Notes: generated by a model from the sequence alone, not told the origin. 64,000 nt of DNA from Oculina patagonica (GCF_052425735.1 NC_135765.1:33356001-33420000), one strand, 5' to 3'. Shown: positions 7,368-50,676, numbered from the stretch's first letter. Made by a program: numbers and translations.

Positions 7368-7825
7368 CTTTCAGTTTTTTTAGGGTTTTTCCCCGACTTC
7401 TCCTGTCATCAATAAACAATGCCCCCTTCAATTTTTGGGATTTTTCCCCATCTTTTATTTCGCAAATTATGGGATCTTGACGAGTGTCAGTACATGTCGA
7501 ATTTGTTTCAAATGAAATTTACCCAATTCATAAACAGAACATGCAAAATGGAGTTAGAATTTGCTAGAAACGATACACTGCTAGAAACGGTCACTGATCT
7601 TTAATATGGTAATCGAGTGTTGTTTACAGTTCATTTTCTTACGGTTTTTTCCCGACTTCTGCTGTCATCAATAAACAATGTCCATTCAAGTTTTGGTTTT
7701 TCCCCCATCTTTTATTTCCCAAATATGGGGATGATTCAGTACATGTCGAATTTGTTTCAAATGAATTCAACCGATTCATAAACAGAACATGCAAAGTTTA
7801 GTTTAGAACTTGCTAGAAACGAAAC
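7368..7825. promoter_or_regulatory. Proximal promoter of copy A: ISRE-like ACTTTCAGTTT and NF-kB-like sites in a ~190-bp module present twice
   Basis: GGGTTTTTCCCC at 7383-7394 and GGGATTTTTCCCC at 7437-7449; the block ~7380-7575 recurs at ~7640-7825. Confidence 0.5.
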
Positions 7826-8079
7826 ATTCAAAAGTTTTACCATTGAGATTTTTTAGTGTATTATTAAATTATTATTGCAAAGAAGGCTGAATTACTGAAT
7901 TGTAGTACGATTTGTTTGCTTGTTTTATTTGACTCGAAAGACTCTAGCCTTAGCACTAACGTCTCCTATATTAATATAGCTATTTCTATTGTCGCACACG
8001 TGTCTGTTTTCCTCGTGAGGAAATAAGAGGTCAAATAGCAGACAGTCACACGCAGGCTGTAAAAAGGACCAGAAAGGCT

Positions 8080-8111
8080 CGAAACTGAAAGTGATTATAC
8101 TTTCGGTTTCG
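8080..8111. promoter_or_regulatory. Inverted pair of IRF/ISRE-like sites upstream of copy A
   Basis: cGAAACTGAAAGTgattatACTTTCGGTTTCg: two matches to GAAANNGAAAGT about 0.9 kb upstream of the copy A ATG. Confidence 0.6.
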
Positions 8112-8705
8112 CATCCAATATATTGGCGCCAATCGATTAGTCAGTTCTGACTCGACAGCTATTTACCGGTAATTAAAAATTGTGTTCACTCTATTCTGTC
8201 TAGATTTCAAAAGTATCAATAGTTTGACCGCTCACGCGCAGGGAAAAAACCCTTGCTGTATGAACGATTCATCGTGTATGACAACGCAGGCACTAATCTG
8301 CTAAGATGAAATCGTAGCGTTTCTCTTATTAGCGACATCAGTCAAACGAAAAAAAAACAACCAAAAACACTGTCAAACAATCCAATTCTCATTTCGGTTC
8401 ATTTAGTATTAAAGGCAATTCTTTTGAAATCCGTAACGATACAATTTCAATTTAGCTAATATTTTGTATTGAGTCGTTAGGAAAAAGCAACCTTTTGTAT
8501 GAAACCTGTCTTTGAGCCCGCGATTCTCGCAACATTGAACGTGACGTCACCTTGTGACGACAATCAGACATAAAACACTTCGTACGATCGTGGGTGTTCG
8601 TGCAATTGTTTGATGGGCTAACGCCAGCGACCGCCAGCCAGAACGTCTTCGCTTTTTTCCGACGAGGATTTGTGAACCATCACCAGTGCTTGTCTACTAC
8701 AAAGA

Positions 8706-11700
8706 TCAAGACGCTATTTTTGGTTCCTTGCCAGCAAATTCCAGTAAACGTTCTCCAGTAAGGCGATACAACTGCCACTCGTCCAGACACACTGCTCCAA
8801 GCTTCTCATAGAAATCCTTGGCTGTTTTATTCCAATTTAAACAATTCCAGTCAACTCTGACACAACCTTTCTCCACAGCTATCTGGAATTATAAAGTAAA
8901 ATTCAATTTAATGTGAATAAGAGGGGTGGACGCTTATGGCTAGTTGCATTCGTCCCCACTCCTTTCTCTTCTCTCCCTCTCCCATCTCAACACTACGTAT
9001 ACTATCTGTCAATAGGCCATTTTACAGTTGTCTGCTCAGTAACCTGGCCTTTGAATGGAAGTGAGGCTGAAGGTGACCTTGTTTTGATACAGACCTCACT
9101 GCTTTTGTTGTGTTAATCGTGTTGTTCTGATGCTAACTAGTTTTCATTTACATGATAAAGCAGACAGGTTTGTATCAATGCAAGGTCACCTCCAGCCTCA
9201 CTACCATTTAAAGGCCAGGCCACTTGGCAGCCAACTGTAAAATGGACTATTACAGGAGAGTAAGAGAACATGTGAAGCAATAATGTTAAATCTTCAAATC
9301 TGAAAAAATAAAGCCAATCATTTTCCCTGCATGACGGTCACCATGAATGGGGTGTAAGAAGGGGGGTGGGAAGGGGAAAAGAAGGGGGGAGGGGAGGGGT
9401 CAGAGAGGACGAGGATGAGAGGAAGGAAGATTGTAATATATTCTCTGTGCCAGTTAAAGGGAACCTCTGTTGTTTAGGCAAGTTGACGTTGAGTTGTTTG
9501 AAATAATGCCTAAACTACAAATTTTACAGGACAGGGGAGAAGCAGCATTTAATAACAACCGTAAACGGAAAAGATTATGGCTTTTAAATTTCCCGCTCGG
9601 CGCCATTTTGGAATTAATTTTATGACGTCAGTGCGTTGCCCAATTGTTTCACACAAAAGAACCTCTGCTTTCTAATAAAAGCGGCAACGCAGTGACGTCA
9701 TAAAATTCAAAATGGCGGCGCGAAGGAAATTTAAAAGCACAAAAATTGACAAATCCAGTATTCTAATGAAAAAAGGAATCCGCGACTTTAAACAACCAAA
9801 ACGATTTTAGACTGTGGTAAACTTATTATTTTGACCAGAACTGTTTTACAGTCGAGGTTCCCTTTAAATAATTGATGGAAGGCTCACTAGAAAAAGGTGA
9901 GGCCAGTTTTGATATCAACATGAAGTGACAAGGATAGGAGCCCATAGGCTCCTAGGGGTATTGCTGCTTTCCCAATGAATTTAATGATTATACTACAGTG
10001 CCTATATAGCATGACTTGGGTCACCATGCAATACTGAACTCTTGAAGCAAAGTGGAAAAAAGAGATTGGCAACTGCAAACTAAATAACATTCTCATTCTC
10101 ATTTTTTTTGACTTAATATATCAACAACTAGCGTGGATAACTTTGTTTGTCTTACATGACACCATGCATTTCACCACCAGTATGTAAGACCCGATCAAGC
10201 TACATATAAATTCATCATTGTTTTTACATACAACAAGGAATCTGTAAAAATTAAAGGACTTTACAGGTCTAAAAAAGTCTCAACCTACCGACGAGACTCG
10301 TCTTAACATCTCTGTGCCAATACCTTTTCCTGTTAAAAATTGAAAATAAAATTAATTAATATAAATGGATGAACAAAAACAAACAAACATTCCAAATGCT
10401 TGAAAATTCAGCATGAATTGGAGCACAATAAGAAATTATTAATTTCTGACAAATTATTAAAAAACTGATCTTTTATAATGCAACGACAACAAGCACTCTC
10501 AAAGGAAGTGTCTCCAAAAAAAAAATGAAAACTAAGCATTTCAAAGGTACAGATAAATTTCAGTATTTTTGTTGGACATCCCCCTTTATGACACTTTAAG
10601 ACTTATGCCTAAGTTGGTGTATGAGAGGTACGGTGGCCTATTAGTGGTTAGGGCACTGGACTCATGATCAAACATTCTGAGTTCAAGCCCTGCTGGGGTC
10701 ATTGTGTTACAAGTGTTCTTGGGCAAGACACTTTACTCTCATCGTGCCTCTGTCCACCTAGCCTGGGTACACACACGTATTTTTGGCTGTTGTTTCCTTT
10801 TGCCGAAAAATAACTATTTTTCAGTGGAGAGAAATGAGGGTCAGAAATACGTCTGTGTTCGCAGGCTACTGTCCACCCAGGTGTACAATTAAATGGGTTA
10901 ATAACCAGAAAATTTAATGTGGGTAACCCTGTGATGGACTAGCATCCCAAACAGGAGGGAGTACAGTAGAAATAGCCCTAGTCACTTCATGCTATTGAAA
11001 ATGGGATAGTTTCCGGCCTGATGGGCCACTAGGGTCAAACACAGACTGTACCTTTTTACCTTAGTTGGTGTAACTCTTTTTTAGACCAGCTCTGAGTGGG
11101 GGTGGGGTGGGGGGGGGGGATATCAGAAGATCATCACTATTAGGTGTATTTTAAATAAAAGGAGTCAGCTGAGAAGCAGTTGAATATTGTTAAGTGACCA
11201 TTGTCTTCTAAAGTGTTTTAACTTCTTTTGTTGCCAATAATCGCAGATATGCACCTGCTCAGGGGATAAAAATGCTTAAACAGGCAACAACAACCTGATA
11301 CTGATGTAGAGTGCTTATTATTACAGTTGTATACATAACACATTAATCAACTAAGTTCTGTATCAACTTCTGAGAGTTATTAAAAAGGTTAAAATAATGT
11401 CAATTACAAAATAATACAAAATAGGTTCTGTTGTTTACACTGTACCTCTACATGTTGGGTCAACATAAAGGTCTTCCAGATATAGAGACCGCCCCTCCCA
11501 CGTGGAATAGATGTAAAAAAATAATGCATAACCAACTGCCTTTCTCTTTGGTAAACAATGATTTTCCTCAGGGGAGTGAAGCTCTTCTGCTATCAGACTT
11601 CCAAACCACGGCTTCTCCTCTCCGAACCCATCTCTCAGCATTTCTGCAAGATACCATAATGATAAGAATTGATTTAACACCCTCCTTCCAATAAGAGGCA

Positions 11701-13726
11701 TTTTCCAATAGGCACTCCCCCTTATAGCTGATGCCCTCTTTTAAATTAGCACCCCTATCCCAATAAGCATCCCCTTCCAGTAAGGGTCTCTATTGTAAAA
11801 GTGACATTTAAGACATATTTAGATGAGCGAATTGTGTAGTCTGCTTTCCCATCTGAATTAAATATTAAACACTTGAACAAGGAAATGGTGTTATGACTAT
11901 GTGAACCCCTATTGTTACAGTTGAGTATCTGTCAGTATCAGATGTTCATTAAAGTGCTTTATCGCATAATCTGAAAAGAAAAATAAGTGCTCTGTTCCTA
12001 ATAGCACTCTTCTACATGTGTATAAGCACTCGCCCTTGGGCTTCCAAGATCTAGAGTAAATTAACACTCTGAGCACTAAATTTAATCATGGCAGTATACA
12101 AAACTGTTGATTGTATGTTTGTGATTGAGCCAGTAGTGCACATGCAGACAGTTTGGAACAAGTTTCCATACTCCCAGCATTTTTGAGGTTGTTCTAAACA
12201 GCAATTTTTTATCAATACACTTTTACATAGTCATTAGTCAAGTATAAAGAGATCAGGTCGTCACATGGCTGGAAGTGTTGGTTTGAGTGCCTGGGGGATA
12301 AGGTCAGGTGGTTCAGAACATGGTTCAGTTTATTTGTTGATAAAATTAACCTACACCACAAAATGGCATCCAAAAATAATTTAAATTTTGTATCAGTTTA
12401 TTTGGCTCCCCACCCATATTCTTTTGGGTAGAGTCCTTCTGTAAGTGGACAGTCTCTGTACTCAGTCATCAGATGTCCCAGCTACATGTACATACACAGA
12501 TTATTCATTTTCACCTACCCATGAGCAGACAAATAAATTCTAATTGCAGACACTTTTTCGGTCCCTGAGGGTGTCCGCTTATGGAAGTTTGACTGCAATA
12601 TTACCTTCTTCAGTGAGTTTTACTCTTGATTCAGGCTCTTTTTCATACACAGCTAAATCCTGCAAAATCAGAATGGAAGGCGTTTACACAAACTGGTATT
12701 CTTTTTTGAATGTGAAATAAAATTTAAGAATAAGTCTAGAAAGAAGATGGGGGACCACATGAGGAAAATTGGTAAACTGGCAAATTGGATACTGACCCCT
12801 TAACCGACAACTCTGGCAAACACACTGTCATTTTTCACCAGGGTTGTAACTAGTAAGAGGCAAGACAAGGCACTTGCCTCATCTAGATTTTCACCCAAAA
12901 TTTAAAACAAAATATGTTTTGTTTGGAAAATAATCCCCAGTTGAACAAGATTGATTTTTCTCACGAAATACCTCATGAAAATGTCTCTCAAAGAGTTTAA
13001 GAGCTTCAAGGTTTAAACATTTTCTGGAGGGCATGACCCCTGAGCCCCAAGCGAAATCTGGCCTCGTCTATGGCAAAGGTCTTGCTTGGGCTCTGTTCAC
13101 AGAAGCGGATACAGTCAACTCTCTCTGAAATGGACATCTTCAGGACTGGCTCGTCTCATAGTGAGTTTAGTTACAGTAAAATGGGTGACAAAAGGCGGGG
13201 ATGGGACCAACGCCAGGTGTCTGTCTTAGAGAGGTGTCCGCCTTATAGAGGTGTCTGTTAAGAGAGAGTTGACTGTACAACTATCAATGAGCAGAAATTT
13301 ATACTATAATATATTAGCAGCAAAATTACTGTCGGGCGGAAATGCGCATGAGCAGACCATAATTTGTAGGCCGTTATTTGTGGATCACACAGCGGGCTCT
13401 CCGTCAATGAAAAGGAAGACAAAATTGCATCAAATGATAATACAGTCTTACATGTAGAGAGGGGTTTGGGCACCCCTCCCCCCCCCCCCCCCCCACCCTC
13501 TCCCCCACCGTGTAGTGTAGTTTGGCGCGTGGACAGGCTTTTTGAATCAGCATTGAGTAAGCTTATTGATGTGAAATTCTAGTACAACTAAGCTAGTAAA
13601 CGGTGTGTAGTAAACTACTCTCGGCGCCGGTGATATAGGGTGGCACATTTTATGATTTACCTTTATCATTCGTAAAATATCTGGGACATCCTCTGCTACT
13701 GCATCACGTATCCGCCAGTTTTCCAT
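8706..13726 (-). CDS. SAT2: Diamine/thialysine N-acetyltransferase (SAT1/SAT2 GNAT family, SAT2-like), 178 aa; exons 13726-13661, 12659-12605, 11643-11446, 10329-10289, 8882-8706
   Basis: Spliced product MENWRIRDAVAEDVPDILRMIKDLAVYEKEPESRVKLTEEEMLRDGFGEEKPWF...YIYSTWEGRSLYLEDLYVDPTCRGKGIGTEMLRRVSSIAVEKGCVRVDWNCLNWNKTAKDFYEKLGA...KIAS*. All introns are GT-AG with consistent phases (exon lengths 66/55/198/41/177 nt). DGFG, YSTWxG, LEDLYV, RGxGIG (acetyl-CoA) and WN..A..FY..LGA motifs are present. Confidence 0.93.
9011..9251. mobile_element. MITE in SAT intron 4
   Basis: aataggccattttacagttg ... caactgtaaaatggactatt. Confidence 0.7.
9458..9863. mobile_element. Kolobok-like MITE with TTAA target duplication
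   Basis: ttaa|agggaacctc ... gaggttccct|ttaa. Confidence 0.75.
10625..11060 (+). mobile_element. Degenerate tRNA-derived SINE with an internal insertion
   Basis: Box A-like ggtggcct..tggttag, box B-like gagttcaagccc and the conserved cttgggcaagacactttactctc core. Confidence 0.65.
13110..13277. mobile_element. Tc1/mariner-like MITE
   Basis: tacagtcaactctctct ... agagagagttgactgta. Confidence 0.7.
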
Positions 13727-13912
13727 CTTTTTTCAGTCGCAACTGACTATATAATCCTCCACAAAGGCAAGAAAAGTGTGACACAAACAATCGAATCTTG
13801 CAAAAATCAATCCGCAACCCCGCAACCGGTCAACACAACTGTCGAAGCACTTTCCGTACTCAGAGATTGTTGAGCCCCCGTTCTGTCTTACCCGCGGTAT
13901 GTTATAAAATGG

Positions 13913-33474: not shown

Positions 33475-33537
<63 letters not shown>

Positions 33538-35186
33538 AAATAAATCTTTATCATATAAGAGATAACTTTGTGTAGTTTCCCTTTAGTAGGATAAATAGAA
33601 TACATTAAAATCTTGAAATATATTGGCACTAGTGTGTGTTTTCATTCGGGCAGCCATTTTCTCTGGAATTTCAGGGGGTGGTCTGGGCTCTGGGGTCTGG
33701 AGCTCAGTGGGATAAAGTATAAAAGATCAGTTCTTTTAACAATGTGCTAAAAGGAAACATTCAAAATTTGTGATTTGTGGGGAATTTTTAACTTCCTATT
33801 GTGCTCCAACTCATGCGGAATTTTCAAGCATTGACAAGTTTGTTTTTGTTCATCCATTTGACATTTATTTTATTTTTAACAGGAAAAGGTATTGGCACAG
33901 AGATGTTAAGAAGAGTCTCCTCGGTAGGTCGAGATTTTTAAATATCCTATATGTTTAACATGGTTCAGTGACTGTTAAGGTCCGGCAAAACGAGGAAACA
34001 TGTTTCCAGAAACATGCTGGAAACATGTTTCCATAATTGTTACCTCGTTTTGCCATGCTTCCATGACACACGGAAACACGAACTGTTTCTAGCGTGTAGC
34101 AGAAGCAAATTGACGCTGGGAACAATGCTTCCCGTGTGGCAAAACTGGGAAACATTGGGGAAACATGCTTGCGCTACGGATGTTTCTGGAAACATGATTG
34201 CTCTTTTTGCCAGGCGTTTAGGCGGCCCAAGTTGTGCTATATAGGCACCGTAGCATAATTATAATCGTTACTTTAGATGCCTGTGTTATACATTCCATCC
34301 AGGGTAAGATATGAGCATGATATCAGAGTATTGCTGATATTAGAACTGTCCCCTGGCCAACTATTTTTAGTGATTCTTAGATCAGTGATTTAATTGGCAC
34401 AGAGAAATTATAAAAATCTTTCTCCCTGTCATCCTAATCCTCCCTGACCACCCCCACCCCTTGTTCCTTCCCCTTCTGCCCACTCCCCCTTTTACACCCT
34501 CTTCATTGGTTTTATTTTTTTCAGATTTTAAGATTTAAACTGAATCAATTGCTAAACATGTCCTCTTACTTAGGGAGGCACGGTGGCCTAATGGTTAGTG
34601 CACCGGACTCAGGATCAAGCGGTCCGAGTTCGAGCCCCGTCCAGGGTCACTTGTGTTGTGTTCTTGGGCAAGACACTTTACTCTCACAGTGCCTCTCTCC
34701 ACCCAGGTGTATAAATGGGTACCGGCGACATAATGCTGGCGGGTACCCTGCGATGGACTAGCATCCCATTCAGGTGGGACTGGGGAGTAGAAATATTCCT
34801 AGCCGCTTAATGCTACGGAAACCGGGGTAAGCTCTGGCAGTGTGGGCCGCATAGCTCGTGGCTTCCCTTTTCTCTTACTTACCTGTTACAACAGATAATT
34901 TGATTAGAATGAAGAAGGAGAGAAGACAAAGGAGTGGGGATGAGTACAAGCAGTGTCCATGTAAGACGAGGTTAAAATGAATTTTACTTTATAATTTCAG
35001 ATAGCTGTGGAGAAAGGTTGTGTCAGAGTTGACTGGAATTGTTTAAATTGGAATAAAACAGCCAAGGATTTCTATGACAAGCTAGGAGCAGTTTGTCTGG
35101 ACGAGTGGCAGTTGTATCGCCTTACTGGAGAACGTTTACTGGAATTTTCAGGCAAGAAACCAAAAATAGCGTCTTCATGCCGGTGA
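29080..35186 (+). CDS. SAT2: SAT2-like N-acetyltransferase, second complete copy, 181 aa; exons 29080-29145, 29963-30017, 30992-31189, 33883-33923, 35001-35186
   Basis: Same exon lengths and splice sites as the minus-strand copy, with few amino-acid changes. The stop position reads TCA instead of TGA, adding SCR. Confidence 0.93.
29438..29721. mobile_element. MITE in SAT intron 1
   Basis: tagagcagttttcaattgagtgtcg ... cgacactcaagtgaaaaccgctcta; absent from the other SAT copy. Confidence 0.7.
31385..31559. mobile_element. Hairpin MITE in SAT intron 3
   Basis: ttacagcaaggcgcccaaaagtgtgaccac ... gtggtcacacttttgggcggcttgctgtaa. Confidence 0.7.
32790..33537 (+). mobile_element. 5'-truncated LINE (L2/CR1 group) 3' end with (TTA)n tail
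   Basis: KAAGRVTLLRKIRSSIT..IYRAMIMPVFTYCS..NTRN..IELPKMKLEFG.RSFSF, followed by an (ATT)n tail at 33478-33537. Confidence 0.75.
34572..34880 (+). mobile_element. tRNA-derived SINE
   Basis: gggaggcacggtggcctaatggttagtg..gagttcgagccc..cttgggcaagacactttactctcacagtgcc. Confidence 0.75.
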
Positions 35187-36420
35187 CAAGGTGTCACAAG
35201 GTGACGTCACGTTGCTTGGTAACCAATGTTACGAAAACGGCGGGGTCAAAGACAGGACACTGAAAAAGTTACTTGTTTCACACTTTTGTAATGAATGGTT
35301 CGAACTTCATTCGATTTCAATTCCTATTTGTACTGTATAAAAAATGTAAATAAAATATTTTTTGGATAACGTATTTTCAAAACTTCTCAAACGAATGTAG
35401 GACAGTTTCTTTCTCTAGCGTAAGACTGAGAAATCGTAAAAAAAGAAATTGAAGGCATTAGACATCAGGGCAACAATACGGTTATTAACCACTTATCTAT
35501 AGAAAGCTGCGTGGTATTTGGTCTCTGCTATTTGACACAGCATGTCCAGTATATTCGCAGTCAACCCTTTCTCTGAGAAAGCAACTCTCCTGAGAGCGTT
35601 GCGTGACGAATAGAACGAAAAGTTCTACCCAGATCTGTTTCTTTAATGTATGACACCCAGTTTTTGTAGAAGACCTAGAAAATTTGCTAGATCCGTAATC
35701 CGCATAACAGTTTCCACGGGTCTGTGAAAATCATTCGTTTTATAATCCGGAATACAAACATTAGTTTTTGTAAAAAAAAAAAAAAAAGGAAATACGACGT
35801 ACAGGTATTGTACAAAAGGTTGCCTTTTCCTAAGGTCTTACAACACTGTAATTGTTGCGGATTTCAAGAATAATTGCTTTGCGAAATGAATCCGGAAATG
35901 AGAATTGGATTGTGTGACGGCGTGTTGTTCAACAAAAAAAGACTGATTACGTCAAAGGTTAGTAAACTTAACAGGGATTATCAGGAACAGACTATTCAGA
36001 AAAGAAAGTCGTATTTCACTAGGAAGGCCTTTAACAGATTGCAACCGATGGCCAACTAATCGGGCAATCGCATGGGTAGGAGAATGGTATGCAATCCTTG
36101 AGCTTTATAACGGTGGAATATAAAGTCCCAGACACGGATGAATCGTTTATACACAGCATGGGTTTTTTTCTCGGCGCGCTGGGGTTCCAACTATTGATCT
36201 TTTTGAGACAGAATAGAACGAAAAAATGGTTATAAGAGATTTACTTCCCTAGAACGATGTTTTAAAAATCGAAATTTCCATTTTGGGTCTGTATATAAAA
36301 AGTATTCGAGGGACACGTGCGTTGTTGTCGAGTCTGAACTGACCAATCAATGGTCGTCAATGTGTTGGGTGCAAAACCCAAAGTATTTACTTTCAATTTC
36401 GAGTCGCGATTTATTTGACT

Positions 36421-36482
36421 CGAAACTGAAAGCAAATACTTTCAGTTTCGTACGAAACTGAAAGTATTTGCTTTCAGTTTCG
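36421..36482. promoter_or_regulatory. Perfect 62-bp palindrome made of four GAAACTGAAAG ISRE-like sites upstream of copy B
   Basis: cgaaactgaaagcaaatactttcagtttcg-ta-cgaaactgaaagtatttgctttcagtttcg equals its own reverse complement. Confidence 0.65.
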
Positions 36483-36892: not shown

Positions 36893-36990
36893 GGGGTAAA
36901 AACCCCAATACTGAAAGTAGGCAATGTTTATCAATAGGAGTAATAAGAGAAGTTGGGGAAAACCCCAAAGCCCTAACTTGGGGTTTTCCC
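36893..36990. promoter_or_regulatory. Cluster of NF-kB-like sites upstream of copy B
   Basis: GGGGTAAAAACCCC (36893), GGGGAAAACCCC (36955) and GGGGTTTTCCC (36980), plus ACTGAAAGT, 190-285 bp upstream of the ATG. Confidence 0.5.
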
Positions 36991-37176
36991 GACTTCTCCC
37001 TTTGTTCTAGGCAAACAACGGTACCTATTACCACAAGATCAGTATAAAATCATTGACCAAGACTGAAGGGGCCATTCCAAACTCGAACAGGAAGAGGTTG
37101 GAATCACCGCGCGTTCACTCGGTTGAGTCAGATACAACGTTTTTCCCTTGCCAGTTGATCACACTAAGCTTCGAAA

Positions 37177-38708
37177 ATGGGCGGAAATTCTAGTTCAAAA
37201 AACAGTTACAGTCAACCACGACAAAAGCCACCGACATCTTCAGGCTTTTTGGGAAGAGGACGAATGACACAGGTATGAAAACAGCCGCTGTATAGAACGT
37301 AACATTTCTGAGGAGGGGTGAATCTAGGTTCGCGAATCGGCGTATTTAGCTTTGCGTTAAATTGAGCTTATTCGCGGAATTTGCGGACCGCGGATAAGCC
37401 AAGAATTTTCTCCTGGATTTTGGTCTCTATCTGTTTTGAAGCTCGGATTGTGGATAGTGAAAGAAAATGACGGGTCTTAGGTTGGCCTTGGTCGGTACTC
37501 TGGCATTTTGTTTATTCGTTTTTCGGACGAAACTACAATATTGCAATCTTTGACCTTGTCACAGGAACTGTCGACGCTTTACATAATAACGAAATGCTTC
37601 ATGTTTCTGAAAACGGGGAAAGCGACGCCAGATATGGGCTATTTGGGCTCATGATTGCTATTTAGAATTACAATCGTTCAAAATCTTTTTAGAGAGAAAG
37701 CCGAGTATAGTATAGCGGGGGCTTGTCACGCAGTCTTGCCAGCGAAAACAAATTTGCAGTGATCGAAGCTGGATCCTGGGTAGACTTGCCCCAAGTTAGT
37801 TATAGTTACTTAAATAAAATCGCTTTGAAATAAAATCGCTTTGAAATCAAGCGCGAAAGAATCGCCTTTGAAATCGCGCGCGAGAGATCGCGCGGGATTC
37901 ATTTCTGTGCACGCGCACGCGAAGGAAAACAAATGACACTTGCCGAGGAATGGCTCGGAACGAGCGACTTGTGTCACTTGCAGGACATCGATTCTAGCTG
38001 ACGTTTTTTGCCGCGAAAATATTGCATCATTTCGTGTACATTGAGTTGGTTTCTTTTATCGTGTTGACGTCAGTTTCGTGCGCCGTGAGCAGCTGACGTG
38101 CGCTGTGGCGTGTGTTAAAATTGCGGTTTTCTTCCCTTTTTTGTGAAAAATCATACTCAAGGCCCTTGATGGCTTTCTCATTTCTGTAAGATTTAAAAGG
38201 GACAGGCACAAAAGAAGACATTTGTAAAGTTTGTTCCCAAACTGGTTTAAACTGCCGATGTGAGAAGGAAACAAGTCTATTCAAGAGGTAAAAAGTTAAA
38301 CTTTGTTTTGTCTTCAAATGTGTATCTGGAGGTGCTCCGGTCCAATTACAACACTTGTGGACGGAGCAGAAGACTAATTACAATCTTAGAAGGAAAAATT
38401 GCTTGTCAGTACCAAGACCAAAGACTGACTTTCTCAAAAAGTCGATTACTTATGAAGGGGCCACATTATGGAATTCTTTGAATAACGAGGCCCGCCTTAA
38501 AGAATCGTTGGCAAGTTTCAAGGGTGCTTTAAAAGTATTAGGGATTTAGAGGCTGTGTATTTTCGTTTGTTTGGAATGCTTAGTTTGTTGTCTTTATTTG
38601 TTATTTAAGGGTTTAGTTAGCTTCAATAGTAATTTGTAAACACGACCACATCAGCTATGCTGCAAAACATTTATCGTGTATAAATAAAAGCTTTTATTAT
38701 TATTATTA

Positions 38709-38752
<44 letters not shown>

Positions 38753-39885
38753 TATTAAACGCAAGCTTGTCTCGCGAGCAGCGCGCGCTTAGTTGGCAAG
38801 CAGAGCGCGCTCAGTAAGGTCGCGCGTAATAATATGATTGACATAATCTTGATGGCGTTAGTTACCGGTGGAAAAATCCACCGGTGACGCCACATTTCAG
38901 AATTGGCGCGCTGCAGGTGAGACAAGCCGCTCCGCCATTTAGTTTCTCATGCCCGCGCACGCCCTCCCTTTCCGTATCCAGCGGTCTCCTGCGAATCTAA
39001 CGAGCGACTTGTAGCAAGTCTAGGTCCTAGGCTTTGACAGGCCTGAGGGGAGAAAGCACAATGAAAGCCAATTTGGCAAAAAGTATCTGCATAAAAACGT
39101 AAATTTTAAAAAAAGAAACGAGAAAACAAAAAAAATCGACTACAGGAAGTAAAGAAAACCGGCAAAACAAGTAGAGAACTTTTCGGTTGTCGGCTATTAA
39201 AATAGTTCCTGGTTTAGACGTCCATTTGTAGTTTTCGCTAATTGTTAGCCTCCTGCGCAGACACTCCTTTGGCTCGTCACACAATCTTTTCTAGATTGTC
39301 ACACAATCTTACCCCGACACGCAATTTTTCCTCGTCACGGAATCTTTTCGAAGTTTTTTCGATCGTGTGACGAGCCAAAAGAATGTCTGCGTAGGAGGCT
39401 AGCTAGTTGACTGTCTCGAGCATTTTATTTAATTCCTTTCCTTTTTTTAATTTCAGCAATACCATCGTGACGTAAAAATATATGTGCGCGAAATCACTGC
39501 TCAAGTTCTTGGAAGAGAACTTATAAGAAGGTGCGGAAACGAAGGGCAGCATCCCTACCTAGACGCTACAGGCCGCACAACTCTGCGATTTCTGCGTACA
39601 GCCATTTCCTTCATTCCTGATGCTCAGAATGATGGTGGTGACATGTGCAATGCTGCCTTTATCTTGTCGCAGCCTGGGCAAGAGTTCCTGATTCAGGCGG
39701 GAGATGGTGACTGGGAGTTTTTCTTCGCAGAAGAAGCAGACGGTCAGATTTATGGCCGTAATGTCCGAAAACCTTTCTTCCGCTACGCGTATGATCGTGT
39801 CAAGTCCGTTGTTAGTCGTATTGGATCTTTCATTGGGGGATTGTTCTCCATTGCTGGACCGGCCTCTCGTCTTGCCTTGATGTGA
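37177..39885 (+). CDS. Uncharacterised 174-aa protein, copy B; exons 37177-37272 and 39457-39885
   Basis: Exon 1 MGGNSSSKNSYSQPRQKPPTSSGFLGRGRMTQ|gtatga; acceptor tttttttaatttcag|CAA; exon 2 QYHRDVKIYVREITAQVLG...SRLALM*. Homologous to copies A and C. Confidence 0.88.
38340..38756 (+). mobile_element. LINE (L2/CR1 group) 3' end in the intron of copy B
   Basis: NYNLR..LSVPRPKTDFLKKSITYEGATLWNSL..SLASFK followed by a (TTA)n tail. Confidence 0.7.
39246..39401. mobile_element. Small MITE in the intron of copy B; decayed counterpart in the copy C intron (~51830-51966)
   Basis: tagcctcctgcgcagaca ... tgtctgcgtaggaggcta. Confidence 0.6.
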
Positions 39886-42754: not shown

Positions 42755-45700
42755 CCTTATTCTTACTAATTTTCGCGAGTACTAATTTTTGCGATTTCAA
42801 ATAATCGCGAAATTTAGTACGCGCGAAAAAAGCATTGCGCGAAATTTAAACACGCGAAACTTAGTACCATATTTTATATCAAAACAATAAAAATTTGGAA
42901 TATTTGGAACTGCACCTATCTACCTTTAAAAATATATCTCTCCATCCTGTTTTTGACTAGCACCCTTCCTCTGATTACTGTTTCGAGCTTGTACATTGGT
43001 TCAAAACCTCTTAAGAGCACAGGTTTCCTACGGTCAAACATATGTCGGTAAGAGTCCTTAAATGGATTTCGCTCATACTCTTACCATGGGTAGGTCTCAA
43101 TATGAAATAAATCACAGTATACTTTGTTTGGCTGAATATCGATTTGTTTTCGAGAAAATCGATAATTCTAAAATCCAGCAAAATTGACGCTTTCGGAGCT
43201 CAAAATTTATGCCGAGTTTGTTAGCTTCGCGTCGTAAAATAAAGCACTCTGGAAGAAAAATACCTATTTAATATCGAAGAATAACATCAAATTAGTACGT
43301 CGAAAGCAATTTCTGCTCTTGAAGTCCTTTTATCTACAAAATATAATTAAATTTATTCGACACACTTTTGATTTAATTCAAAATAGGTCAAACTTATCGC
43401 TTTATTAAAGTATGAGCGAAGCGAAATAAATGGCCGAAAATTTGGTACTAGACAGATAAATGATTGTTCTTTTCGATACTAAAAGGATTTCCTAGGGAAA
43501 TGATTTAGTGCGATGCTTTCAGATCTCAAAGTTGCTTAAAATTCGTTAATTTAACCGACCGTGACATTGTTGATCTTATCAACATTATGTAAACAATCCA
43601 CGCAAAGGTTAATTTTCCCCATGTGAACTTCAACTGAGTAAAATAAAAACATAGACTTGCTTACCGTGGTGTTCGCTGATACATTGTAAATCCTGTTTTC
43701 CTCATTTACGACAAAACCTAAGCCCTCGGCGAAGCTGTTATCCAATTTTCTTGACGCGCCATTTGTAACTGATTTCCACGTCTTGAAGTGACAGTTCTTT
43801 TCCATGCATTCTTGAAAACAGTCCAGTCTTAACTGATCAGCGTAAACAGGAATACGAAGTACTTTGCTTTAAATCAACTTAAAGCTTAGCAGCAGGGGTA
43901 GATAAATCGATACGGCCGGCGAATCTTCGTTTCGAAAACCGTCATTTGAGATTTGTCGGCCCTTTGTCCTGCGGTATGCAGATAATTAATTCACACTTGA
44001 GTAACTTCCGGCACATGAAATCGACAACCACCGTGACCAGATAGCACCTAACCTGCGATCAGGCTTACCCCTCCACCGCGAGAAAAATAACGCCTGATCG
44101 CAGGTTAGATAGCACCCAACTTTTCGAAATATTGGTCGAGGCACTATTTTTATCATTTTAACATAAGCTCTCAATGAAAAACTTTTGGGCTGAACTTGTA
44201 ATAAAGTTTCACTTCAGTTAGCCACCGTTCGAGAGAGTTGTTAAATCATGAAATCCGGGTGGAAAGTTCTTCTGTTGCGTTGCTTCGCTTTGTTTCATAT
44301 TTTTTTATCCAGTTCTTACCCTTGTTCAAATTCTTGTCCCTTCTTCAGTGGAAAATTTGAAACGACGTTAAAATCCGAACTGAGTTGGAGCCGGTCCCGA
44401 AGGTACCCGTTTCAGAGAGAGTTGGCTGTGGTTGGATCCGTCTCCCGTGAATGTCAGTTAAAAATATATATTCTGTGTAGTCTAGCCTGTAAACAAGCTC
44501 TCCTTCTTTCTCCTGTGGAGATTGGGCGAAATAAAAGCGGGAAGGAAAGGTGGGGAAGGAGTGGGGGAAAAAGGGACCATATATCATGTATATGCAGTTG
44601 TAATACCAGTCACGGTAAACAATTTATAATAAAACGCTGAACATTTATGACTGTTTACACCAAGGTGTATATTGGTGTAAAAATAAAGGAAAGGGTGCTT
44701 TTCACTTCATTAGATTAAAGCTAGGTGAGGAAAAGTACACGTAATCAGAAGTTTGTTATGGACTTCTGACGTGATGCCATATTTTGTATTTATTTCTGCA
44801 AAGTACAACAAAGCATTTATACCAAAGTAGCATTATTGAAAAAAAAAATGAGCATAATTACAGTTGAGCATTATATCGGACAAAAAACAAGCATTGTTAG
44901 AAGCATAACATTCCCTTTTTACCAGCGTAATTGGAAGGGCTTCTGGTATTCAGTTAGAAAGAACTTGCATTCAAAAGATACCGCGTTCTAGAAACAAGTC
45001 ACCCCGTTTTGGCTGCTGATATTTTGTAACTTTTGTGTGTTCAAAATACCATATCTCGTTCTAGATATCGTCTGATATTGAAAATCCCGTTCTAGATCGG
45101 GAACCCAAAACCACGATCTCATTGGACGGCACAGAGCCGTTTTTGGGGAATACCCCAGCTTCGACAACTCCTTCCCAATAAAGTTCGCCTATTGAATTGA
45201 GAATTAAGGTGATTATAAAGTTATTACTTTATATCTCTTGTTGTTTGGAAACTTGAGTCGTATTATAATTACAAACGTCTTATTTACGAAGGAATATAAT
45301 GCGGATAATATTTGAAACTTAAACCGTTTTTCCCCTAATAGCTTCCAAATCAACTCAAAAACACACCGGAAAACAGGTTTAAAAACAAAATATTTATATA
45401 ATGACTATGATATTTTTAATACATTTGGGTCCCCTGACGGCGAGGCGCTTGTCTCTCCCCGCAAGCTCTGGCGGGGGACACCTTCCCTTGTTTTCGCCGG
45501 ACCCCAACAGAATATATATATGGTCATATTTTTTAACATTCACAGAAGACGGATCCAACGATAACATCTTAGATTTTGCTTTCACCTGTTTTGCCTTGAC
45601 CTAATCAAGAACTTGGACAAAGGTAAGAACAAAAAAAACTATAAAGCGAAGCAACGCAACAGAAGAACATTAGACCCAGGAGTTAAAAGCGCTGCCATGA

Positions 45701-48624
45701 AACTATTTAGCAACTTTCACAAACGGTGGCTACCTGAAGTGAAACTTAATTACATGTTCAGCCCAAAAGTTTTTCATTTAGAGCTTATATTAATATAGCA
45801 ATAATATGGTGCCTCAACCAATACTACGGTATTTTCTCGATTAAACGCCGGGCCCCGAATAAACGCCGGGTCTCCAAGCTCTATTTGAAAATAAACCCTT
45901 TAAACAATTATTAAAAGTTTAATATGCTTTAAAAATAATGTCGAATTATAAAGCTTTCAAAAATAATGAATAAAAATCATTTCTTAGATACATAGGGCCT
46001 GAAAAAACTCCTGGAATCAAATAAACGCCGGCCCTATCGGGCCAAGTTTGAAATAAACGCCCGGGGGGGGGGGTACTCCATATAATGGCCTATACGGGGA
46101 GGCTCCGCCCGAAAGGGGTACCTTTTTCAGGCTTCAGGTATATAAAAGGGTAGGGATTTCACAAGTTTAGGTATATGAAAGGGTATGTAAATCCGTGTTT
46201 TAGGGTTTTAAAAGGGCCTTGAATTAAAATATTTGAACAGACGCACTTTATGACTGTATTATTTTAATTTATAAAGCGCAGCATGAAAATGACAAGAAAA
46301 CGTCCTGTTCTAAGTCTATGCCATGTCTTTTAGGTATATGAAAGGGGTACCTTTTTTCAGTAAAAGGTATACGAAAGGGGTACAATTTCAGTCTGTAAAA
46401 ATGGTATATAAAAGGGTAAGGGGTAAGAGCTTGGGGCGGAGCCTCCCCGTACAAAACTTTTTTGAGTGCCCCCCCCGGGAATAAACGCCGGAGGCGTTTA
46501 ATGGAGAAAATACGGTATATCAAAACGCAGGGTGCTATCTGGTCACGGCGGTTGTCGATTTCATGTGCCGGAAGTTACGCAAGTGTGAAATACATTATCT
46601 GCACACCGCAGGGCCGACAAATCTCAAATAGCAGTTTTCGAAAAGAAGATTTGCCGGCCGAATCGATTTATCAACCACTGCTGCTGTCCGGAACGTTTCG
46701 GTCCGATTTTCGGATAGGATATGTCTTCTGTTTACACGGATAGGATAGGCCTTCTGTTTAAACGGGGCCGTTCTGGAACCGGTGCGGGACGGAACCAAAA
46801 CTGGACCTGCTATTTTGCAGGTCAAGTTATGGAACCGTTCCGGACCGGTTCCAGAACCGTCCTGTGTAAACACATGGATCGGTGCCAAACGCTTCCGTGT
46901 AAACAGAGGCCGATCCTGTCCGGTCCAGTTCGGAACGGCTCCGGTCCGGTCCCGTGTAAACGTAGCCTAGCTGGTTAGAGTATAAAAATGACTGAAAAAA
47001 CGGCAAGGACAGGACCAACACCAGGTGTCCGTCTTATAGAGATCTTCAATAAGGGAGAGTTGACTCTACAACTGCTTTGCCTTAGCCTAATCAAGAATTT
47101 GAACAAGGGTAAGAACTGGATAAAAAATATGCAGCAAAGCGAAGCAACGCAACAGAAGAACTTTCGACCCGGAAGTTAAAAGCGCTTTCATGCAACCATT
47201 TAACAACTCTCTCGAACGGTGGCTTACTGAAGTGAAACTTAATTACAAGTTCAGCCCAAAAGTTTTTTAAGAGAGCTTATGTTAAAATAATAAAAATAAT
47301 GCCTCAACCAATACACCAAAAAGCAGGGTGCTTTCTGGTCACGGTGGTTGTCGATTTCATGTGCCGGAAGTTACTCAAGTGTGAATTAATTATCTGCATG
47401 CCGCAGGACAAAGGGCCGACAAATCTCAAATGGCGGTTTTCGAAACGAAGATTCGCCGGCCGTATCGATTTATCTACCACTGCTGCTAAGCTTTAAGTTG
47501 ATTTAAGCAAAGTACATCGTTTTCCTGTTTACACTGATCAGTTAAGACTGGACTGTTTTCAAGAATGCATGGAAAAGAACTGTCACTTCAAGACGTGGAA
47601 ATCAGTTACAAATGGCGCGTCAAGAAAATTGGATAACAGCTTCGCCGAGGGCTTAGGTTTTGTCGTAAATGAGGAAAACAGGATTTACAATGTATCAGCG
47701 AACACCACGGTAAGCAAGTCTATGTTTTTATTTTACTCAGTTGAAGTTCACATGGGGGAAATTAACCTTTGCGTGGATTGTTTACATAATGTTGATAAGA
47801 TCAACAATGTCACGGTCGGTTAAATTAACGAATTTTAAGCAACTTTGAGATCTGAAAGCATCGCACTAAATCATTTCCCTAGGAAATCCTTTTAGTATCG
47901 AAAAGAACAATCATTTATATGTCTAGTACCAAATTTTCGGCCATTTATTTCGCTTCGCTCATACTTAAATAAAGCGATAAGTTTGACCTATTTTGAATTA
48001 AATCAAAAGTGTGTCGAATAAATTTAATTATATTTTGTAGATAAAAGGACTTCAAGAGCAGAAATTGCTTTCGACGTACTAATTTGATGTTATTCTTCGA
48101 TATTAAATAGGTATTTTTCTTCCAGAGTGCTTTATTTTACGACGCGAAGCTAACAAACTCGGCATAAATTTTGAGCTCCGAAAGCGTCAATTTTGCTGGA
48201 TTTTAGAATTATCGATTTTCTCGAAAACAAATCGATATTTAGCCAAACAAAGTATACTGTGATTTATTTCATATTAAGGCCTACCCATGGTAAGAGAATG
48301 AGCGAAATCCATAACAGGGCTCTTGCCAAGAATTTTCATTTTTGTTTGAAATTTGTGCATATGTCCTCTTAAGTATACAGTCACTAAAGTTTCCGTTTGC
48401 AGACTCCTTGTTGTTACATTGAGACAGACCTTTGTGTATTTCCAGTGGTTTCTTATAATGTTAGTCTTTGACAACTGATCCATAAAAACACTGACAAAAT
48501 CGCGAAATTTAATACACTTTTCCTCTAATTTTTCTTGCAATCACGAAAATTAATACTCGCGAAATTCGCCTCTCGAATTTTCGCGAAATTTAGTACGCGC
48601 GAAATTAACTTAGTAAGAATAAGG
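42755..48624. mobile_element. TA-flanked MITE (TIR ccttattcttact) interrupted by the TTAA element
   Basis: ta|ccttattcttact ... agtaagaataagg|ta; the empty site is at ~2825-2835 (reverse strand). Confidence 0.7.
43015..48368. mobile_element. TTAA-flanked (Kolobok-like) element with ~1.2 kb inverted arms, nested in a MITE
   Basis: ttaa|GAGCACAG ... ATGTCCTC|ttaa; the empty site cctcttaagtac is in the sister MITE near 54345. The arms ~43062-44337 and ~47091-48312 are reverse complements. Confidence 0.65.
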
Positions 48625-50539
48625 TACTCTGTTTTTTTTACCTAGAATGAAAACCTTCGAACTGGCCCACTTCAAAATTATCTTTTCATTCTTCTAACTC
48701 GCCACTTTTTTTTATTCTGTTTATTTGACGAGATATTTACGTTTTCATTGATTCACACAATGTTGACCAATGTTCTTTAGAAGACAGCAAAACCGCGAGG
48801 ACTCTCTGAAACCCGGACTGGACTTTCAAAACGGACTAGGGAATTAAAAGAAGCATGGTTTATTGTAGCAAAAGGTTGAATTTTGTTAATTTTAAAAAAA
48901 AAATGAGAAAACCCACTTTACTATTTTTACTGCTACAAAGAAGAAACGACGAGAAAGATAAAATGTACTCCTATAACAACAAGCTAGGATTTTGTCATAA
49001 AATATGAAAGTTCAGGGTTTTACTTGAGTTTGTTCCGCCATCCTTGTTTCAATAGTCCAGTCCAGTATTTTATTGAAAACTCCATTTAGTTCAGGGATAT
49101 TAGGAAAATAATTTTTTTCTTTTCAAGATGTTAATCCCTCCCTGAAAAACCTTTATTTTGCCTTTGAAAACTGTTGTGTTATGCGTTTGACTTGACCGTC
49201 GCATAAATGTGATACTTATAATAACCCAGCACCAGCCATTTTTAAGCGATGACGTCAGGAAATTGCTTATTGTCATCGCACGATGGGCTCTTTTACTCTG
49301 TTAGGGCGATCGAACAGAAATCAAGTTTAACTTCACAAGAAATCGCCGCGTAGAATACAAAAGCAAAATACTCCCGTGCAGTCAGAATGGAACACTACAA
49401 TGTATAAACGAAAGAGACTAATTTTATAATGTGGTATATATTAGATTTAGTAGACAGAAATTTCTAATTCTTATAATACAGGGCCGCTGTAAACAAGCAG
49501 AAACAAGAGACCGTTTGACCTTTCTCGCAGCTTAAAAGCTAACTCCCGCGTATCGCGCGTATGTCGTTTATCGGATGTCACACACTACAATATAACGCAA
49601 TCTACTGTGTCTACGAAGAAAATGTATTATTAACTTTGTATCCTTGGCCTGTGAATTAATAACTACTGTATTTATTTGAATTCCATCAGATCCTAGCTAT
49701 GCTATTAAGACAATCACCAACATTGCTTCTTAGATTTAAAAAAAGAACACTGCAATTGGATAACAGTTTTTATCACGCACAAGGTGTCAGCTACATTTAT
49801 TTACGTTGAGTTTTTGACAAATTTTTCTCAAAATTATGTTAGACCCTTTGTGAAACGTCATCGCTTCTGCATGCACTGCATGCCGTTTATTGAGGCTGAT
49901 GTCACCTTAATCTTGTGTGTTAAAGTTACAAAGATCGTGTATATACATCAAATGTTAGCAGCCAATAAAGATGGATGGTTTTCAGCCGAATTTTTAAAAA
50001 TATCGCAAAGTCAGAAATATTTCACTGACGTCTTAAATTAGTACATAGTTTGCCTGGTACGATAAAAAATAGCGAGGTGCATGTGGCAGACTTGTTTGTT
50101 CGAATATAAATCTTTTTCTGAGATATTAGTACGGTATTTAGTATCTAAACTTAGTCATTATTGATGCTGTAAAGTCACAAATAAAAAAGGTACAGAGATT
50201 ACACACGAGTGCGTGAATAGTATTTGTGCAACTTCCGAAGCCTTCTGAAAATTATCCAAACAAGCTTTCCAACCTTTTCCAAGCTTTCCAAGCCTTTTTC
50301 GACGAGTTTCCAGCGCAGTGATCCGAAGATGCTTCGACTAATTTTAATTATTATGTTTATATTATTATCATTTTATTTTTTTAAATTTGTTACTATATTT
50401 TTTTTTATTTTTTCCGCAGTCCGCTGTCCGCCATCCGCCGTCCGTTTCCTCACTTTACTGAATATGAGACAACTTTTGAATGTATGATCAGTTAAAGGAG
50501 ATTTTGAGCTTGTTCTTTAAAGTTAAGATATGTTAAATC

Positions 50540-50676
50540 GGGGGAATTTCAATATCGAAAAAAATTCGAAAAATGAACCGAATGATTCATTAACATTTCC
50601 TTATTTAGCCTTATTTTGAATATAGATGCTAGGGGAAAAATAAAACTGAAAGTGGGCAGAATTCGGGAAAAACCCC
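50540..50676. promoter_or_regulatory. NF-kB-like and IRF-like sites upstream of copy C
   Basis: GGGGGAATTTC (50540), AAACTGAAAGT (50643) and GGGAAAAACCCC (50665). Confidence 0.5.

What the first reader, a model, noticed from the sequence alone, without database searches (positions are those of the whole stretch)
7368..50676. All three copies have promoters rich in IRF/ISRE and NF-kB motifs, like interferon-stimulated genes
Seen: copy A has GAAACTGAAAGT and GAAACCGAAAGT (8080-8111), ACTTTCAGTTT (~7368), GGGTTTTTCCCC and GGGATTTTTCCCC. Copy B has four GAAACTGAAAG (36421-36482) and GGGGAAAACCCC / GGGGTTTTCCC (36955-36990). Copy C has GGGGGAATTTC, AAACTGAAAGT and GGGAAAAACCCC (50540-50676). A GAS-like TTCGCGGAA is shared in the introns of B (37371) and C (51072). 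Established: GAAANNGAAA is the IRF-binding element and GGGRNNYYCC the kB consensus; anthozoans encode IRF, NF-kB, STAT, STING and RLR homologs but no interferons. Inference: the genes are direct outputs of nucleic-acid-sensing pathways. Some kB matches have one extra central base, so they are imperfect.
Basis: partly seen in the sequence, partly recalled or inferred. Interest (0 to 1): 0.8.

Follow-up and report, generated by a model that had tools for sequence, protein, structure and literature searches.

The report
Immune-style promoters of coral genes
Three neighbouring copies of an unstudied stony-coral gene carry, just upstream of their start sites, paired DNA motifs like those that NF-kB and interferon-regulatory factors use to switch on antiviral genes in vertebrates. 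Distant copies and other corals keep the pairing, so these genes are good candidates for infection-induced genes, but induction itself has not been tested.

Summary
ISRE and kB-like motifs are far above chance in the window; the GAS-like site is not. The genome is Oculina patagonica.

The three copies encode a roughly 172-aa, two-exon protein that is restricted to stony corals. It has an MGxxxS N-terminus, no Pfam match and no solved-fold match. The splice of copy B is confirmed in two RNA-type runs.

The core of each promoter is a kB-like site (GGG-W4-5-CCC, Dorsal/p50 type) next to an ISRE-like site, 25-60 bp upstream of a conserved TATA box. The same kB-then-ISRE module recurs in at least four further promoters of the 12-member family, in orthologues from other corals, and upstream of this coral's viperin gene and one IRF gene. 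It is absent from 160 kb of control promoters.

Copies A and B also share a distal inverted ISRE pair. In B it is joined by a perfect 62-bp palindrome that is unique in the genome. Copy C lacks both.

The cis-regulatory reading is well supported. TF binding and immune induction were not tested. The assembly gap does not touch any promoter, but the block duplicated at both gaps leaves the locus layout uncertain. The scan's first readers noted similar ISRE/kB grammar on other DNA of this genome; those notes are unchecked.

The parts
4914..5348 (-). Copy A, coding exon 2 with stop
   Evidence: Open frame and acceptor site. Homologous to B and C.
7087..7176 (-). Copy A, coding exon 1 (30 aa, starts MGNFGS)
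   Evidence: A-specific letters across the splice junction appear in RNA-type run X15 at depth 107 (table 5c).
7334..7345 (-). Copy A TATA-like box (AAGATATTAAAA)
   Evidence: Aligned with the TATA boxes of B, C and the orthologues.
7367..7394 (-). Copy A proximal composite: GGGGAAAAACCC, 5 bases, then AAACTGAAAGT
   Evidence: Kept in the orthologous locus L067.
7437..7449 (-). Copy A second kB-like site (GGGGAAAAATCCC)
7588..7826 (-). Tandem duplicate of A's promoter module, with degenerate kB-like sites
   Evidence: 82% self-match of 7324-7577 to 7588-7826. Absent from L067.
8081..8110 (.). Distal inverted ISRE pair between A and neighbour X1
   Evidence: Identical in L067.
35000..35356 (-). 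First exon of divergent neighbour X2; transcribed, no long open frame
   Evidence: RNA-type contigs of X15 and X18 cover it (table 8). Frames checked.
36368..36403 (.). B-side homologue of A's ISRE pair: one arm decayed, one intact (GAAATTGAAAGT)
   Evidence: 81% local alignment of A 8157-8078 to B 36326-36403.
36421..36482 (.). Perfect 62-bp palindrome with four GAAACTGAAAG
   Evidence: Equals its own reverse complement. Folds at -35 kcal/mol, z -9. Pattern unique in the genome.
36893..36918 (+). Copy B degenerate kB-like site followed by ATACTGAAAGT
36955..36990 (+). Copy B proximal kB sites GGGGAAAACCCC and GGGGTTTTCCC
   Evidence: They lie 52-87 bp upstream of the TATA box.
37042..37049 (+). 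Copy B TATA box (GTATAAAA)
   Evidence: mRNA-type contigs begin at 37046 and 37082.
37177..37272 (+). Copy B coding exon 1 (32 aa, starts MGGNSSS)
   Evidence: The GT..AG splice to 39457 is seen in X15 (depth 330) and X18 (depth 203).
39457..39885 (+). Copy B coding exon 2 with stop
   Evidence: 100% match to the 174-aa O. patagonica protein P0001.
50632..50676 (+). Copy C proximal module: degenerate kB-like site, AAAACTGAAAGT, GGGAAAAACCCC
50731..50742 (+). Copy C TATA-like box
50865..50957 (+). Copy C coding exon 1 (31 aa, starts MGNSKS)
52026..52451 (+). Copy C coding exon 2 with stop
   Evidence: Corresponds to P0005, 172 aa.
37371..37379 (+). GAS-like TTCGCGGAA in B's intron (twin at 51072-51080 in C); no evidence of function
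   Evidence: Present, but the motif class is at chance in the window. It is shared because the introns are paralogous.

Best explanation
The three genes are members of a 12-gene family, all on one chromosome of Oculina patagonica and found by sequence only in stony corals. The family encodes small proteins that are probably N-myristoylated.

Each gene has a TATA-box promoter. Its main upstream element is a Rel/NF-kB-type site (GGG-W4-5-CCC) placed 2-13 bp from an IRF-type site (GAAANNGAAA-like), about 60-170 bp upstream of the transcription start. Copies A and B also share a distal inverted ISRE pair in the intergenic region they share with a divergent neighbour. In B a 62-bp palindrome has raised the count to five good ISREs.

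The most likely working is co-operative activation by the coral's NF-kB and one or more of its IRFs after pattern-recognition signalling, as at vertebrate ISG and IFN-beta type promoters but without interferon.

Shown here: the motifs, their enrichment, their ordered conservation, the gene models, transcription and the approximate start site.
Inferred: which factors bind, and that expression is inducible.
For: Enrichment over shuffles.

Proximal module and TATA box:
- Shared by A, B and C.
- Kept in Desmophyllum pertusum, which has three kB-like sites and a perfect GAAACTGAAAGC.
- Kept in two other coral assemblies, L006 and L008, and in the close orthologue L067.

Deep paralogues at about 45-60% protein identity carry the same kB-then-ISRE order pointing toward the gene:
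- L066, about -140 from the ATG.
- L063, about -100.
- L062 and L065, about -490.
- C8:25866481.

Controls:
- 0 composite modules in 160 kb upstream of 40 Ras-family genes. The chance rate is about 0.0012 per kb, from 7 kB-like and 43 ISRE-like sites.
- One module each upstream of viperin and of one IRF gene. That IRF promoter also has GGGGAAAACCCC and the classical GGGGATTCCCC.

Genome-wide, composites number 203 against 71 for the reversed controls.

Transcription: splice junction and 5' ends.

The genome has at least six IRF genes. Literature: the Dorsal-type consensus (PMC4617966); p50-like specificity of anemone NF-kB (PMC5700166); cnidarian-specific, NF-kB-dependent, cGAMP-induced genes exist in Nematostella (PMC8713801).
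Against: - No expression comparison under immune challenge was possible, so constitutive or cell-type-specific use is not excluded.
- Single-motif enrichment at the viperin and IRF promoters over control promoters is only modest: 4 sites in 26 kb against 6 in 160 kb, P about 0.02.
- The module was not seen upstream of the Porites, Acropora and L009 homologues, nor upstream of paralogue P0185.
- Copy C, and the proximal sites of A and B, have imperfect ISREs.
- IRF knockdown had no measurable effect on the cGAMP response in Nematostella (PMC8713801).
- Paralogy inflates the apparent replication within the window.
Confidence: 0.52

Rival explanations
1. The motifs are functional but do a different job. 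They could set constitutive or cell-type-specific expression (for example in immune-like cells or cnidocytes, where cnidarian NF-kB acts in development). They could also be bound by other factors with overlapping specificity, such as NFAT-type Rel proteins, PRDM1/Blimp-like repressors or ETS-IRF composites.
For: - Conservation shows constraint, not which factor binds.
- Transcripts are readily found in ordinary, apparently unchallenged RNA-type runs, with contig depth 200-330.
- NF-kB has developmental roles in Nematostella (discussed in PMC5700166).
- IRF knockdowns had no effect on the cGAMP response (PMC8713801).
Against: - The same module sits upstream of viperin and an IRF gene.
- TATA-box promoters with kB plus ISRE are typical of inducible genes (general knowledge).
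- ISRE tandems elsewhere in this genome lie beside conflict-type genes.
Confidence: 0.25
2. The distal ISRE clusters (8081-8110 and 36389-36482) mainly serve the divergently transcribed neighbour X, or both genes, rather than the A/B family.
For: - They lie between head-to-head genes. In the A locus the cluster is about 430 bp from X1's homologous start and about 800 bp from A's start. In the B locus it is about 1.05 kb from X2's start and about 0.6-0.7 kb from B's.
- Copy C, which has no X partner, lacks the cluster.
Against: - X3, a third X copy with no family gene beside it, has no ISRE upstream.
- X was not found next to the orthologues in other corals, while those orthologues keep ISRE-like sites.
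Confidence: 0.15
3. The motifs have no function: chance matches carried along by recent duplication of one promoter.
For: - A, B and C promoters are alignable paralogues.
- L067 is about 90% identical throughout, so its conservation says little.
Against: - The ordered module recurs in paralogue promoters where I saw no shared sequence beyond the module, and in other genera.
- None in 160 kb of control promoters.
- In B, decay of one ancestral ISRE arm goes with a gain of four new ISREs.
Confidence: 0.06
4. The 62-bp palindrome is a hairpin-RNA (miRNA-like) gene or a structural or recombination element, not a transcription-factor site array.
For: - It folds as a perfect 29-bp stem, z -9.
- Below-threshold hits to several miRNA models.
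Against: - All Rfam hits are far below gathering scores.
- No RNA-type coverage over 36272-36455 in four runs.
- The arms are exact ISRE consensus copies, homologous to the A-side ISRE pair.
Confidence: 0.04

Closest known systems
Vertebrate ISG and IFN-beta enhanceosome-type promoters (adjacent IRF and NF-kB sites, PRDI-PRDII)
   Same: IRF-type GAAANNGAAA elements directly beside kB elements, close to a TATA box. Multiple ISREs are present.
   Different: - There is no interferon in cnidarians.
- The order here is mostly kB then ISRE.
- The kB sites are the 10-12 bp GGG-W4-5-CCC type.
- Binding and induction are untested.
Drosophila Dorsal/Dif/Relish kB sites (GGGWWWWCCM and 11-mer variants; PMC4617966)
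   Same: The coral sites GGGAAAACCC and GGGAAAAACCC fit this consensus exactly.
   Different: The fly immune promoters I know of pair kB sites with GATA sites, not ISREs (from memory; flies lack IRFs).
Cnidarian-specific genes induced by 2'3'-cGAMP through NF-kB in Nematostella (PMC8713801)
   Same: Lineage-restricted genes of unknown function with a predicted NF-kB input.
   Different: - No sequence relative of this family was found outside stony corals.
- That study reports no promoter motif analysis in its main text.
- Induction is not shown here.
IRF-driven Vago and IFN-like systems of shrimp and oyster (PMC4602278, PMC8218723)
   Same: Invertebrate genes proposed to be switched on through IRF sites in their promoters.
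   Different: Those rest on reporter and knockdown experiments; this rests on sequence evidence only. The product here looks intracellular and membrane-anchored, not secreted.

Membership tests
ISG-type (IRF plus NF-kB) inducible promoter | ISRE/IRF-E consensus GAAANNGAAA(C/G)(T/C) in the promoter | tested here: met
   Perfect 12-mers at 8081, 8099, 36389, 36438 and 36454. The proximal sites of A and C have one mismatch, and B's has two. Copy C has no perfect site.
ISG-type (IRF plus NF-kB) inducible promoter | kB consensus: GGGRNNYYCC, or the Dorsal/p50-type GGG-W4-5-CC(C/A) | tested here: met
   B has two 10-mer matches. A, B and C all have GGG-W4-5-CCC sites. Consensus taken from PMC4617966.
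ISG-type (IRF plus NF-kB) inducible promoter | Motif density above a promoter background | tested here: met
   Against 160 kb of control promoters: kB-like P about 4e-7 in the proximal 450 bp, and ISRE 12-mers P about 1e-8 in 1.5 kb. Composite modules: 0 in the controls. The copies are paralogous, so these P values overstate independence.
ISG-type (IRF plus NF-kB) inducible promoter | Sites conserved in orthologues and paralogues | tested here: met
   Seen in Desmophyllum, L006, L008, L067 and at least four further family promoters in the genome. Not seen in Porites, Acropora, L009 or P0185.
ISG-type (IRF plus NF-kB) inducible promoter | Same grammar at canonical antiviral genes of the same genome | tested here: inconclusive
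   Composite modules lie upstream of viperin and one of six IRF genes. Single-motif enrichment is only P about 0.02, and the start sites of those genes are unknown.
ISG-type (IRF plus NF-kB) inducible promoter | Binding by IRF and NF-kB proteins | not testable with these tools
   Needs EMSA, PBM, DAP-seq or ChIP.
ISG-type (IRF plus NF-kB) inducible promoter | Induction by viral or nucleic-acid stimuli | not tested
   Reads were laid on the gene model. No paper names these genes.
STAT (GAS) regulated gene | GAS sites TTCNNNGAA above chance | tested here: not met
   30 observed against 30.3 expected.
Known protein family for the product | Match to a curated domain or a solved fold | tested here: not met
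   - No Pfam family.
- No Foldseek PDB match at E <= 0.001.
- Best VIA-align Z 3.7.
- AFDB cluster matches are all uncharacterised proteins.

The most novel reading that the evidence does not exclude
The kB-then-ISRE composite may define an interferon-independent, NF-kB/IRF co-dependent regulon of roughly one to two hundred loci in this coral. This stony-coral-restricted family of small myristoylated proteins would be its most heavily marked member and a new class of antiviral or antibacterial effector. The B-specific ISRE palindrome would then be a recent adaptive gain in enhancer strength.
Probability: 0.25. Interest if true: 0.75.

Novelty: new member of a known kind. Interest (0 to 1): 0.55.

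Why it matters
How cnidarians wire their antiviral response without interferon is an open question. In Nematostella, NF-kB explains only part of the cGAMP response and single IRF knockdowns showed no effect (PMC8713801). My literature searches found no description of ISRE-type promoter grammar in a cnidarian.

A compact composite element gives a concrete target for reporter, EMSA and DAP-seq work. It is conserved across a gene family and shared with viperin and an IRF gene. It also nominates an uncharacterised coral gene family as a candidate immune effector and marker gene.

Tried and rejected
- Protein identity. No result from Pfam, Foldseek against PDB, VIA-align wide or the ESM Atlas feature search. 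AFDB clusters returned only uncharacterised coral, mollusc and reptile proteins. Larger homologues gave no informative domains.
- Literature. No paper names the Acropora, Desmophyllum or Oculina gene identifiers.
- Exact look-ups of P0001 and P0033 found no record.
- Neighbour X. No convincing open frame in its first exon and no homologue beside the orthologues. Its nature, protein-coding or non-coding, is unresolved.
- Rfam on both intergenic regions returned only below-threshold miRNA-like hits caused by the hairpin.
- The idea that the motifs belong to a repeat family is rejected. GGGGAAAAMCCC is rare and not enriched genome-wide (203 against 199 for the control), and the ISRE palindrome pattern is unique.
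- The Ras-family control promoters have about five times the genome-wide density of the kB-like motif, so they are a conservative background.
- Three promoters of the C8:25.8 Mb cluster and the loci of other composite modules could not be fetched.


Full report
**What is there**

The window is chromosome piece C8:33356001-33420000 of Oculina patagonica.

A self-comparison shows three paralogous units:
- Copy A lies on the minus strand at about 2300-7340.
- Copy B lies on the plus strand at about 37045-43015.
- Copy C lies on the plus strand at about 50470-54350.

Each unit has two coding exons.
- Exon 1 encodes 30-32 residues beginning MGxxxS. That start is kept in the full-length members of the homologue alignment and fits an N-myristoylation signal.
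- Exon 2 encodes about 141-143 residues with the invariant stretches RCGNEG and GDGDWE.

The B model equals the annotated 174-aa protein P0001. Its GT..AG intron (37273-39456) is spanned by contigs of two RNA-type runs, at depth 330 and 203. A-specific letters across the equivalent junction show that copy A is spliced and expressed too (table 5c).

The product has no Pfam match and no solved-fold relative. By sequence it was found only in stony corals: Oculina, Desmophyllum, Acropora, Montipora and Porites. The genome holds 12 members, all on C8.

**Check of the observation**

| Motif | Observed in window | Expected from shuffles |
|---|---|---|
| GAAANNGAAAST | 6 | 0.97 |
| GGGWWWWNCCC | 9 matches (5 sites) | 1.36 |
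| TTCNNNGAA (GAS) | 30 | 30.3 |

Five of the six ISRE matches lie in the two clusters. The GAS-like claim therefore carries no weight.

Genome-wide, the kB-like 12-mer is rare and not part of a repeat. The inverted ISRE pair built on GAAACTGAAAG exists only at the two places in this window. Among about two dozen relaxed inverted ISRE pairs in 529 Mb, three are here.

**The gap**

The finding spans the gap at 22114-22613. Nothing shows continuity across it.

The 6.1 kb to its left is repeated at 99.8% immediately after the second gap (55148-61282). Neither copy runs on across its gap. This looks like overlapping contig ends with a 32-kb contig (X2, B and C) placed between them. So it is not settled whether A and B are paralogues on one haplotype, divergent haplotypes or a scaffolding artefact.

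All promoters lie well inside gap-free sequence, so the motif claims do not depend on this.

**Anatomy of the promoters**

The three proximal promoters align over about 450 bp. They share a TATA-like box: A at 7345-7334, B at 37042-37049 and C at 50731-50742.

mRNA-type contigs of B begin at 37046 and 37082. That places the start near 37075. B's two kB sites then sit at about -85 to -120, and its ISRE-like ACTGAAAGT at about -160.

In A the arrangement is GGGGAAAAACCC, five bases, then AAACTGAAAGT, about 25-50 bp upstream of the TATA box. In C it is AAAACTGAAAGT, eleven bases, then GGGAAAAACCCC.

GGG-W4-5-CC(C/A) is the working consensus for Drosophila Dorsal (PMC4617966), and anemone NF-kB proteins bind like vertebrate p50 (PMC5700166).

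**The distal ISRE clusters**

A and B each lie head to head with a repeated unit I call X. X2's first exon (35000-35356, minus strand) is transcribed but has no long open frame.

The two intergenic regions are colinear homologues.
- A's inverted pair (8078-8111) corresponds to B's 36368-36403. There one arm has decayed to AAAACCCAAAGT and the other remains GAAATTGAAAGT.
- Next to it, B alone has a perfect 62-bp palindrome (36421-36482) that adds four exact GAAACTGAAAG.

Loss on one side and gain next to it fits turnover under selection for ISRE content, but it is a single event.

A closely related genome assembly (L067) has A's pair unchanged. This confirms the pair independently of this assembly. 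At about 90% overall identity, L067 says little about constraint.

Copy C has no distal cluster. The third X copy, which has no family gene beside it, has none either. The cluster therefore belongs to the A-X and X-B intergenic regions and cannot be assigned to one partner.

**Conservation beyond the window**

This is the strongest evidence.

Orthologous promoters:
- Desmophyllum pertusum has three GGG-A4-5-CCCC sites and a perfect GAAACTGAAAGC within 80 bp.
- Two unnamed coral assemblies (L006, L008) keep kB-like sites at -130 to -305. L008 also has GAAATTGAAAGT.
- The Porites, Acropora and L009 homologues showed no such sites.

Paralogues within the genome, at about 45-60% protein identity, carry the same ordered module with the kB-like site first, the ISRE 2-13 bp downstream and both pointing toward the gene:
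- GGGAAAACCCCCATCGAAACTGAAAAC at about -140 (L066).
- GGGACAAATCCCTTGAAAGTGAAAGT at about -100 (L063).
- GGGATTTTTCCC, 13 bases, then GAAACGGAAAAC at about -490 (L062 and L065).
- GGGATTTTCCCTCGAAACTGAAA between a divergent pair at C8:25866481.

One paralogue (P0185) has none.

**Controls**

I took 4 kb upstream of 40 Ras-family genes, 160 kb in all. They contain 7 kB-like sites, 43 ISRE-like sites and no composite within 40 bp. That implies about 0.0012 chance composites per kb.

Upstream of viperin and six IRF genes, a composite is present at two:
- Viperin has GAAACAGAAAC, 24 bases, then GGGAAAACCC.
- One IRF gene has GAAAGGGAAAAACCCC. Its promoter also holds GGGGAAAACCCC, GGGACTTTTCCC and the classical GGGGATTCCCC.

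On single motifs alone, these immune promoters exceed the controls only modestly, at P about 0.02. I therefore treat this as suggestive.

Genome-wide, the two composite arrangements give 97 + 106 matches against 35 + 36 for the reversed patterns. Five of the matches belong to this family and one to viperin. Many others fall in tandem gene arrays that I could not inspect.

ISRE tandems elsewhere lie beside an NLR-like gene with GT4-conflict, TRADD-N and LRR domains, and upstream of HEPN_DZIP3 genes.

**Interpretation**

The data show a constrained, ordered kB-plus-ISRE element at proximal-promoter distance in a TATA-box promoter. The element is shared across a gene family and with at least two canonical antiviral genes.

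The simplest reading is joint control by NF-kB and IRF proteins after immune signalling.

What is missing is any measurement of binding or induction. The transcripts are easily found in ordinary RNA-type runs, so basal expression exists. Constitutive or cell-type-specific use of the same sites is the main rival. I put the immune-inducible reading at about one half.

**Comparison and novelty**

The architecture works like vertebrate ISG and IFN-beta type promoters and uses Dorsal/p50-type kB sites. It is a new instance of a known kind of regulatory element, in a phylum where I found no published description of such grammar, in front of an uncharacterised gene family.

The scan's first readers flagged ISRE/kB grammar at several other places in this genome. 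Those notes are unchecked and I used them only as leads.

Noticed in passing
15967-22113 and 55148-61282: A 6.1-kb block repeated at 99.8%. One copy ends exactly at the first gap and the other starts exactly after the second gap. This looks like overlapping contig ends around an inserted 32-kb contig, so the layout of A relative to B and C is uncertain.
   Followed up: partly
8538-15927 (+), 27647-35178 (-), 18995-21532 (+), 58172-60703 (+): Repeated unit 'X', head to head with A and with B. Its first exon is transcribed (35000-35356), has no long open frame and carries a conserved TGACGTCA (CRE-like) site. I could not tell whether it is protein-coding or a non-coding RNA.
   Followed up: partly
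36558-36687: A short dispersed repeat between the ISRE palindrome and B's proximal promoter. It has very high summed depth in the RNA-type runs, with loose ends on both sides, so the reads come from copies elsewhere.
   Followed up: no
13990-14125: A compact cluster: GAAACTGAAA, an inverted CCAAT box, two ETS-type GGAAGT sites (one is CCGGAAGT), a perfect GAS TTCCCGGAA and TTTCGTTTTC. It lies inside a 1.3-kb stretch present in X1 but not in X2 and may be another promoter.
   Followed up: no
7588-7826: O. patagonica copy A has a 240-bp tandem duplication of its promoter module. The closely related assembly L067 lacks it.
   Followed up: partly
L013 4923-4970 (G000 C4:29.98 Mb): Six overlapping ISRE units in tandem, inside a locus that encodes GT4-conflict glycosyltransferase, TRADD-N and LRR_6 domains (NLR-like conflict gene).
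   Followed up: partly
L012 5220-5243 (G000 C8:29.5-30.0 Mb, nine copies): A tandem ISRE pair (consensus GAAATGGAAAGTGAAATCGAAACT), repeated nine times over 500 kb. In the one copy fetched (L012, GAAATAGAAAGTGAAATCGAAACT) it lies about 2.3 kb upstream of a gene with a DZIP3-type HEPN domain.
   Followed up: partly
G000 C4:21.49-21.64 Mb, C11:18.55-18.59 Mb, C12:16.87-16.90 Mb, C4:5.02-5.03 Mb: The kB-plus-ISRE composite recurs at regular spacing in several tandem arrays, for example TTTCACTTTCATTCGGGGAAATCCC six times. The flanking genes are not identified.
   Followed up: no
P0091 and P0203 (Montipora foliosa, 885 and 1055 aa): The family's domain also occurs at the C-terminus of a much longer protein with no Pfam domains. 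Structure search links the fold weakly to uncharacterised mollusc and reptile proteins.
   Followed up: partly
43047-44048 and 47327-48327: A 1-kb inverted repeat at 98% identity between copies B and C, with further related pieces at 45583-47487.
   Followed up: no
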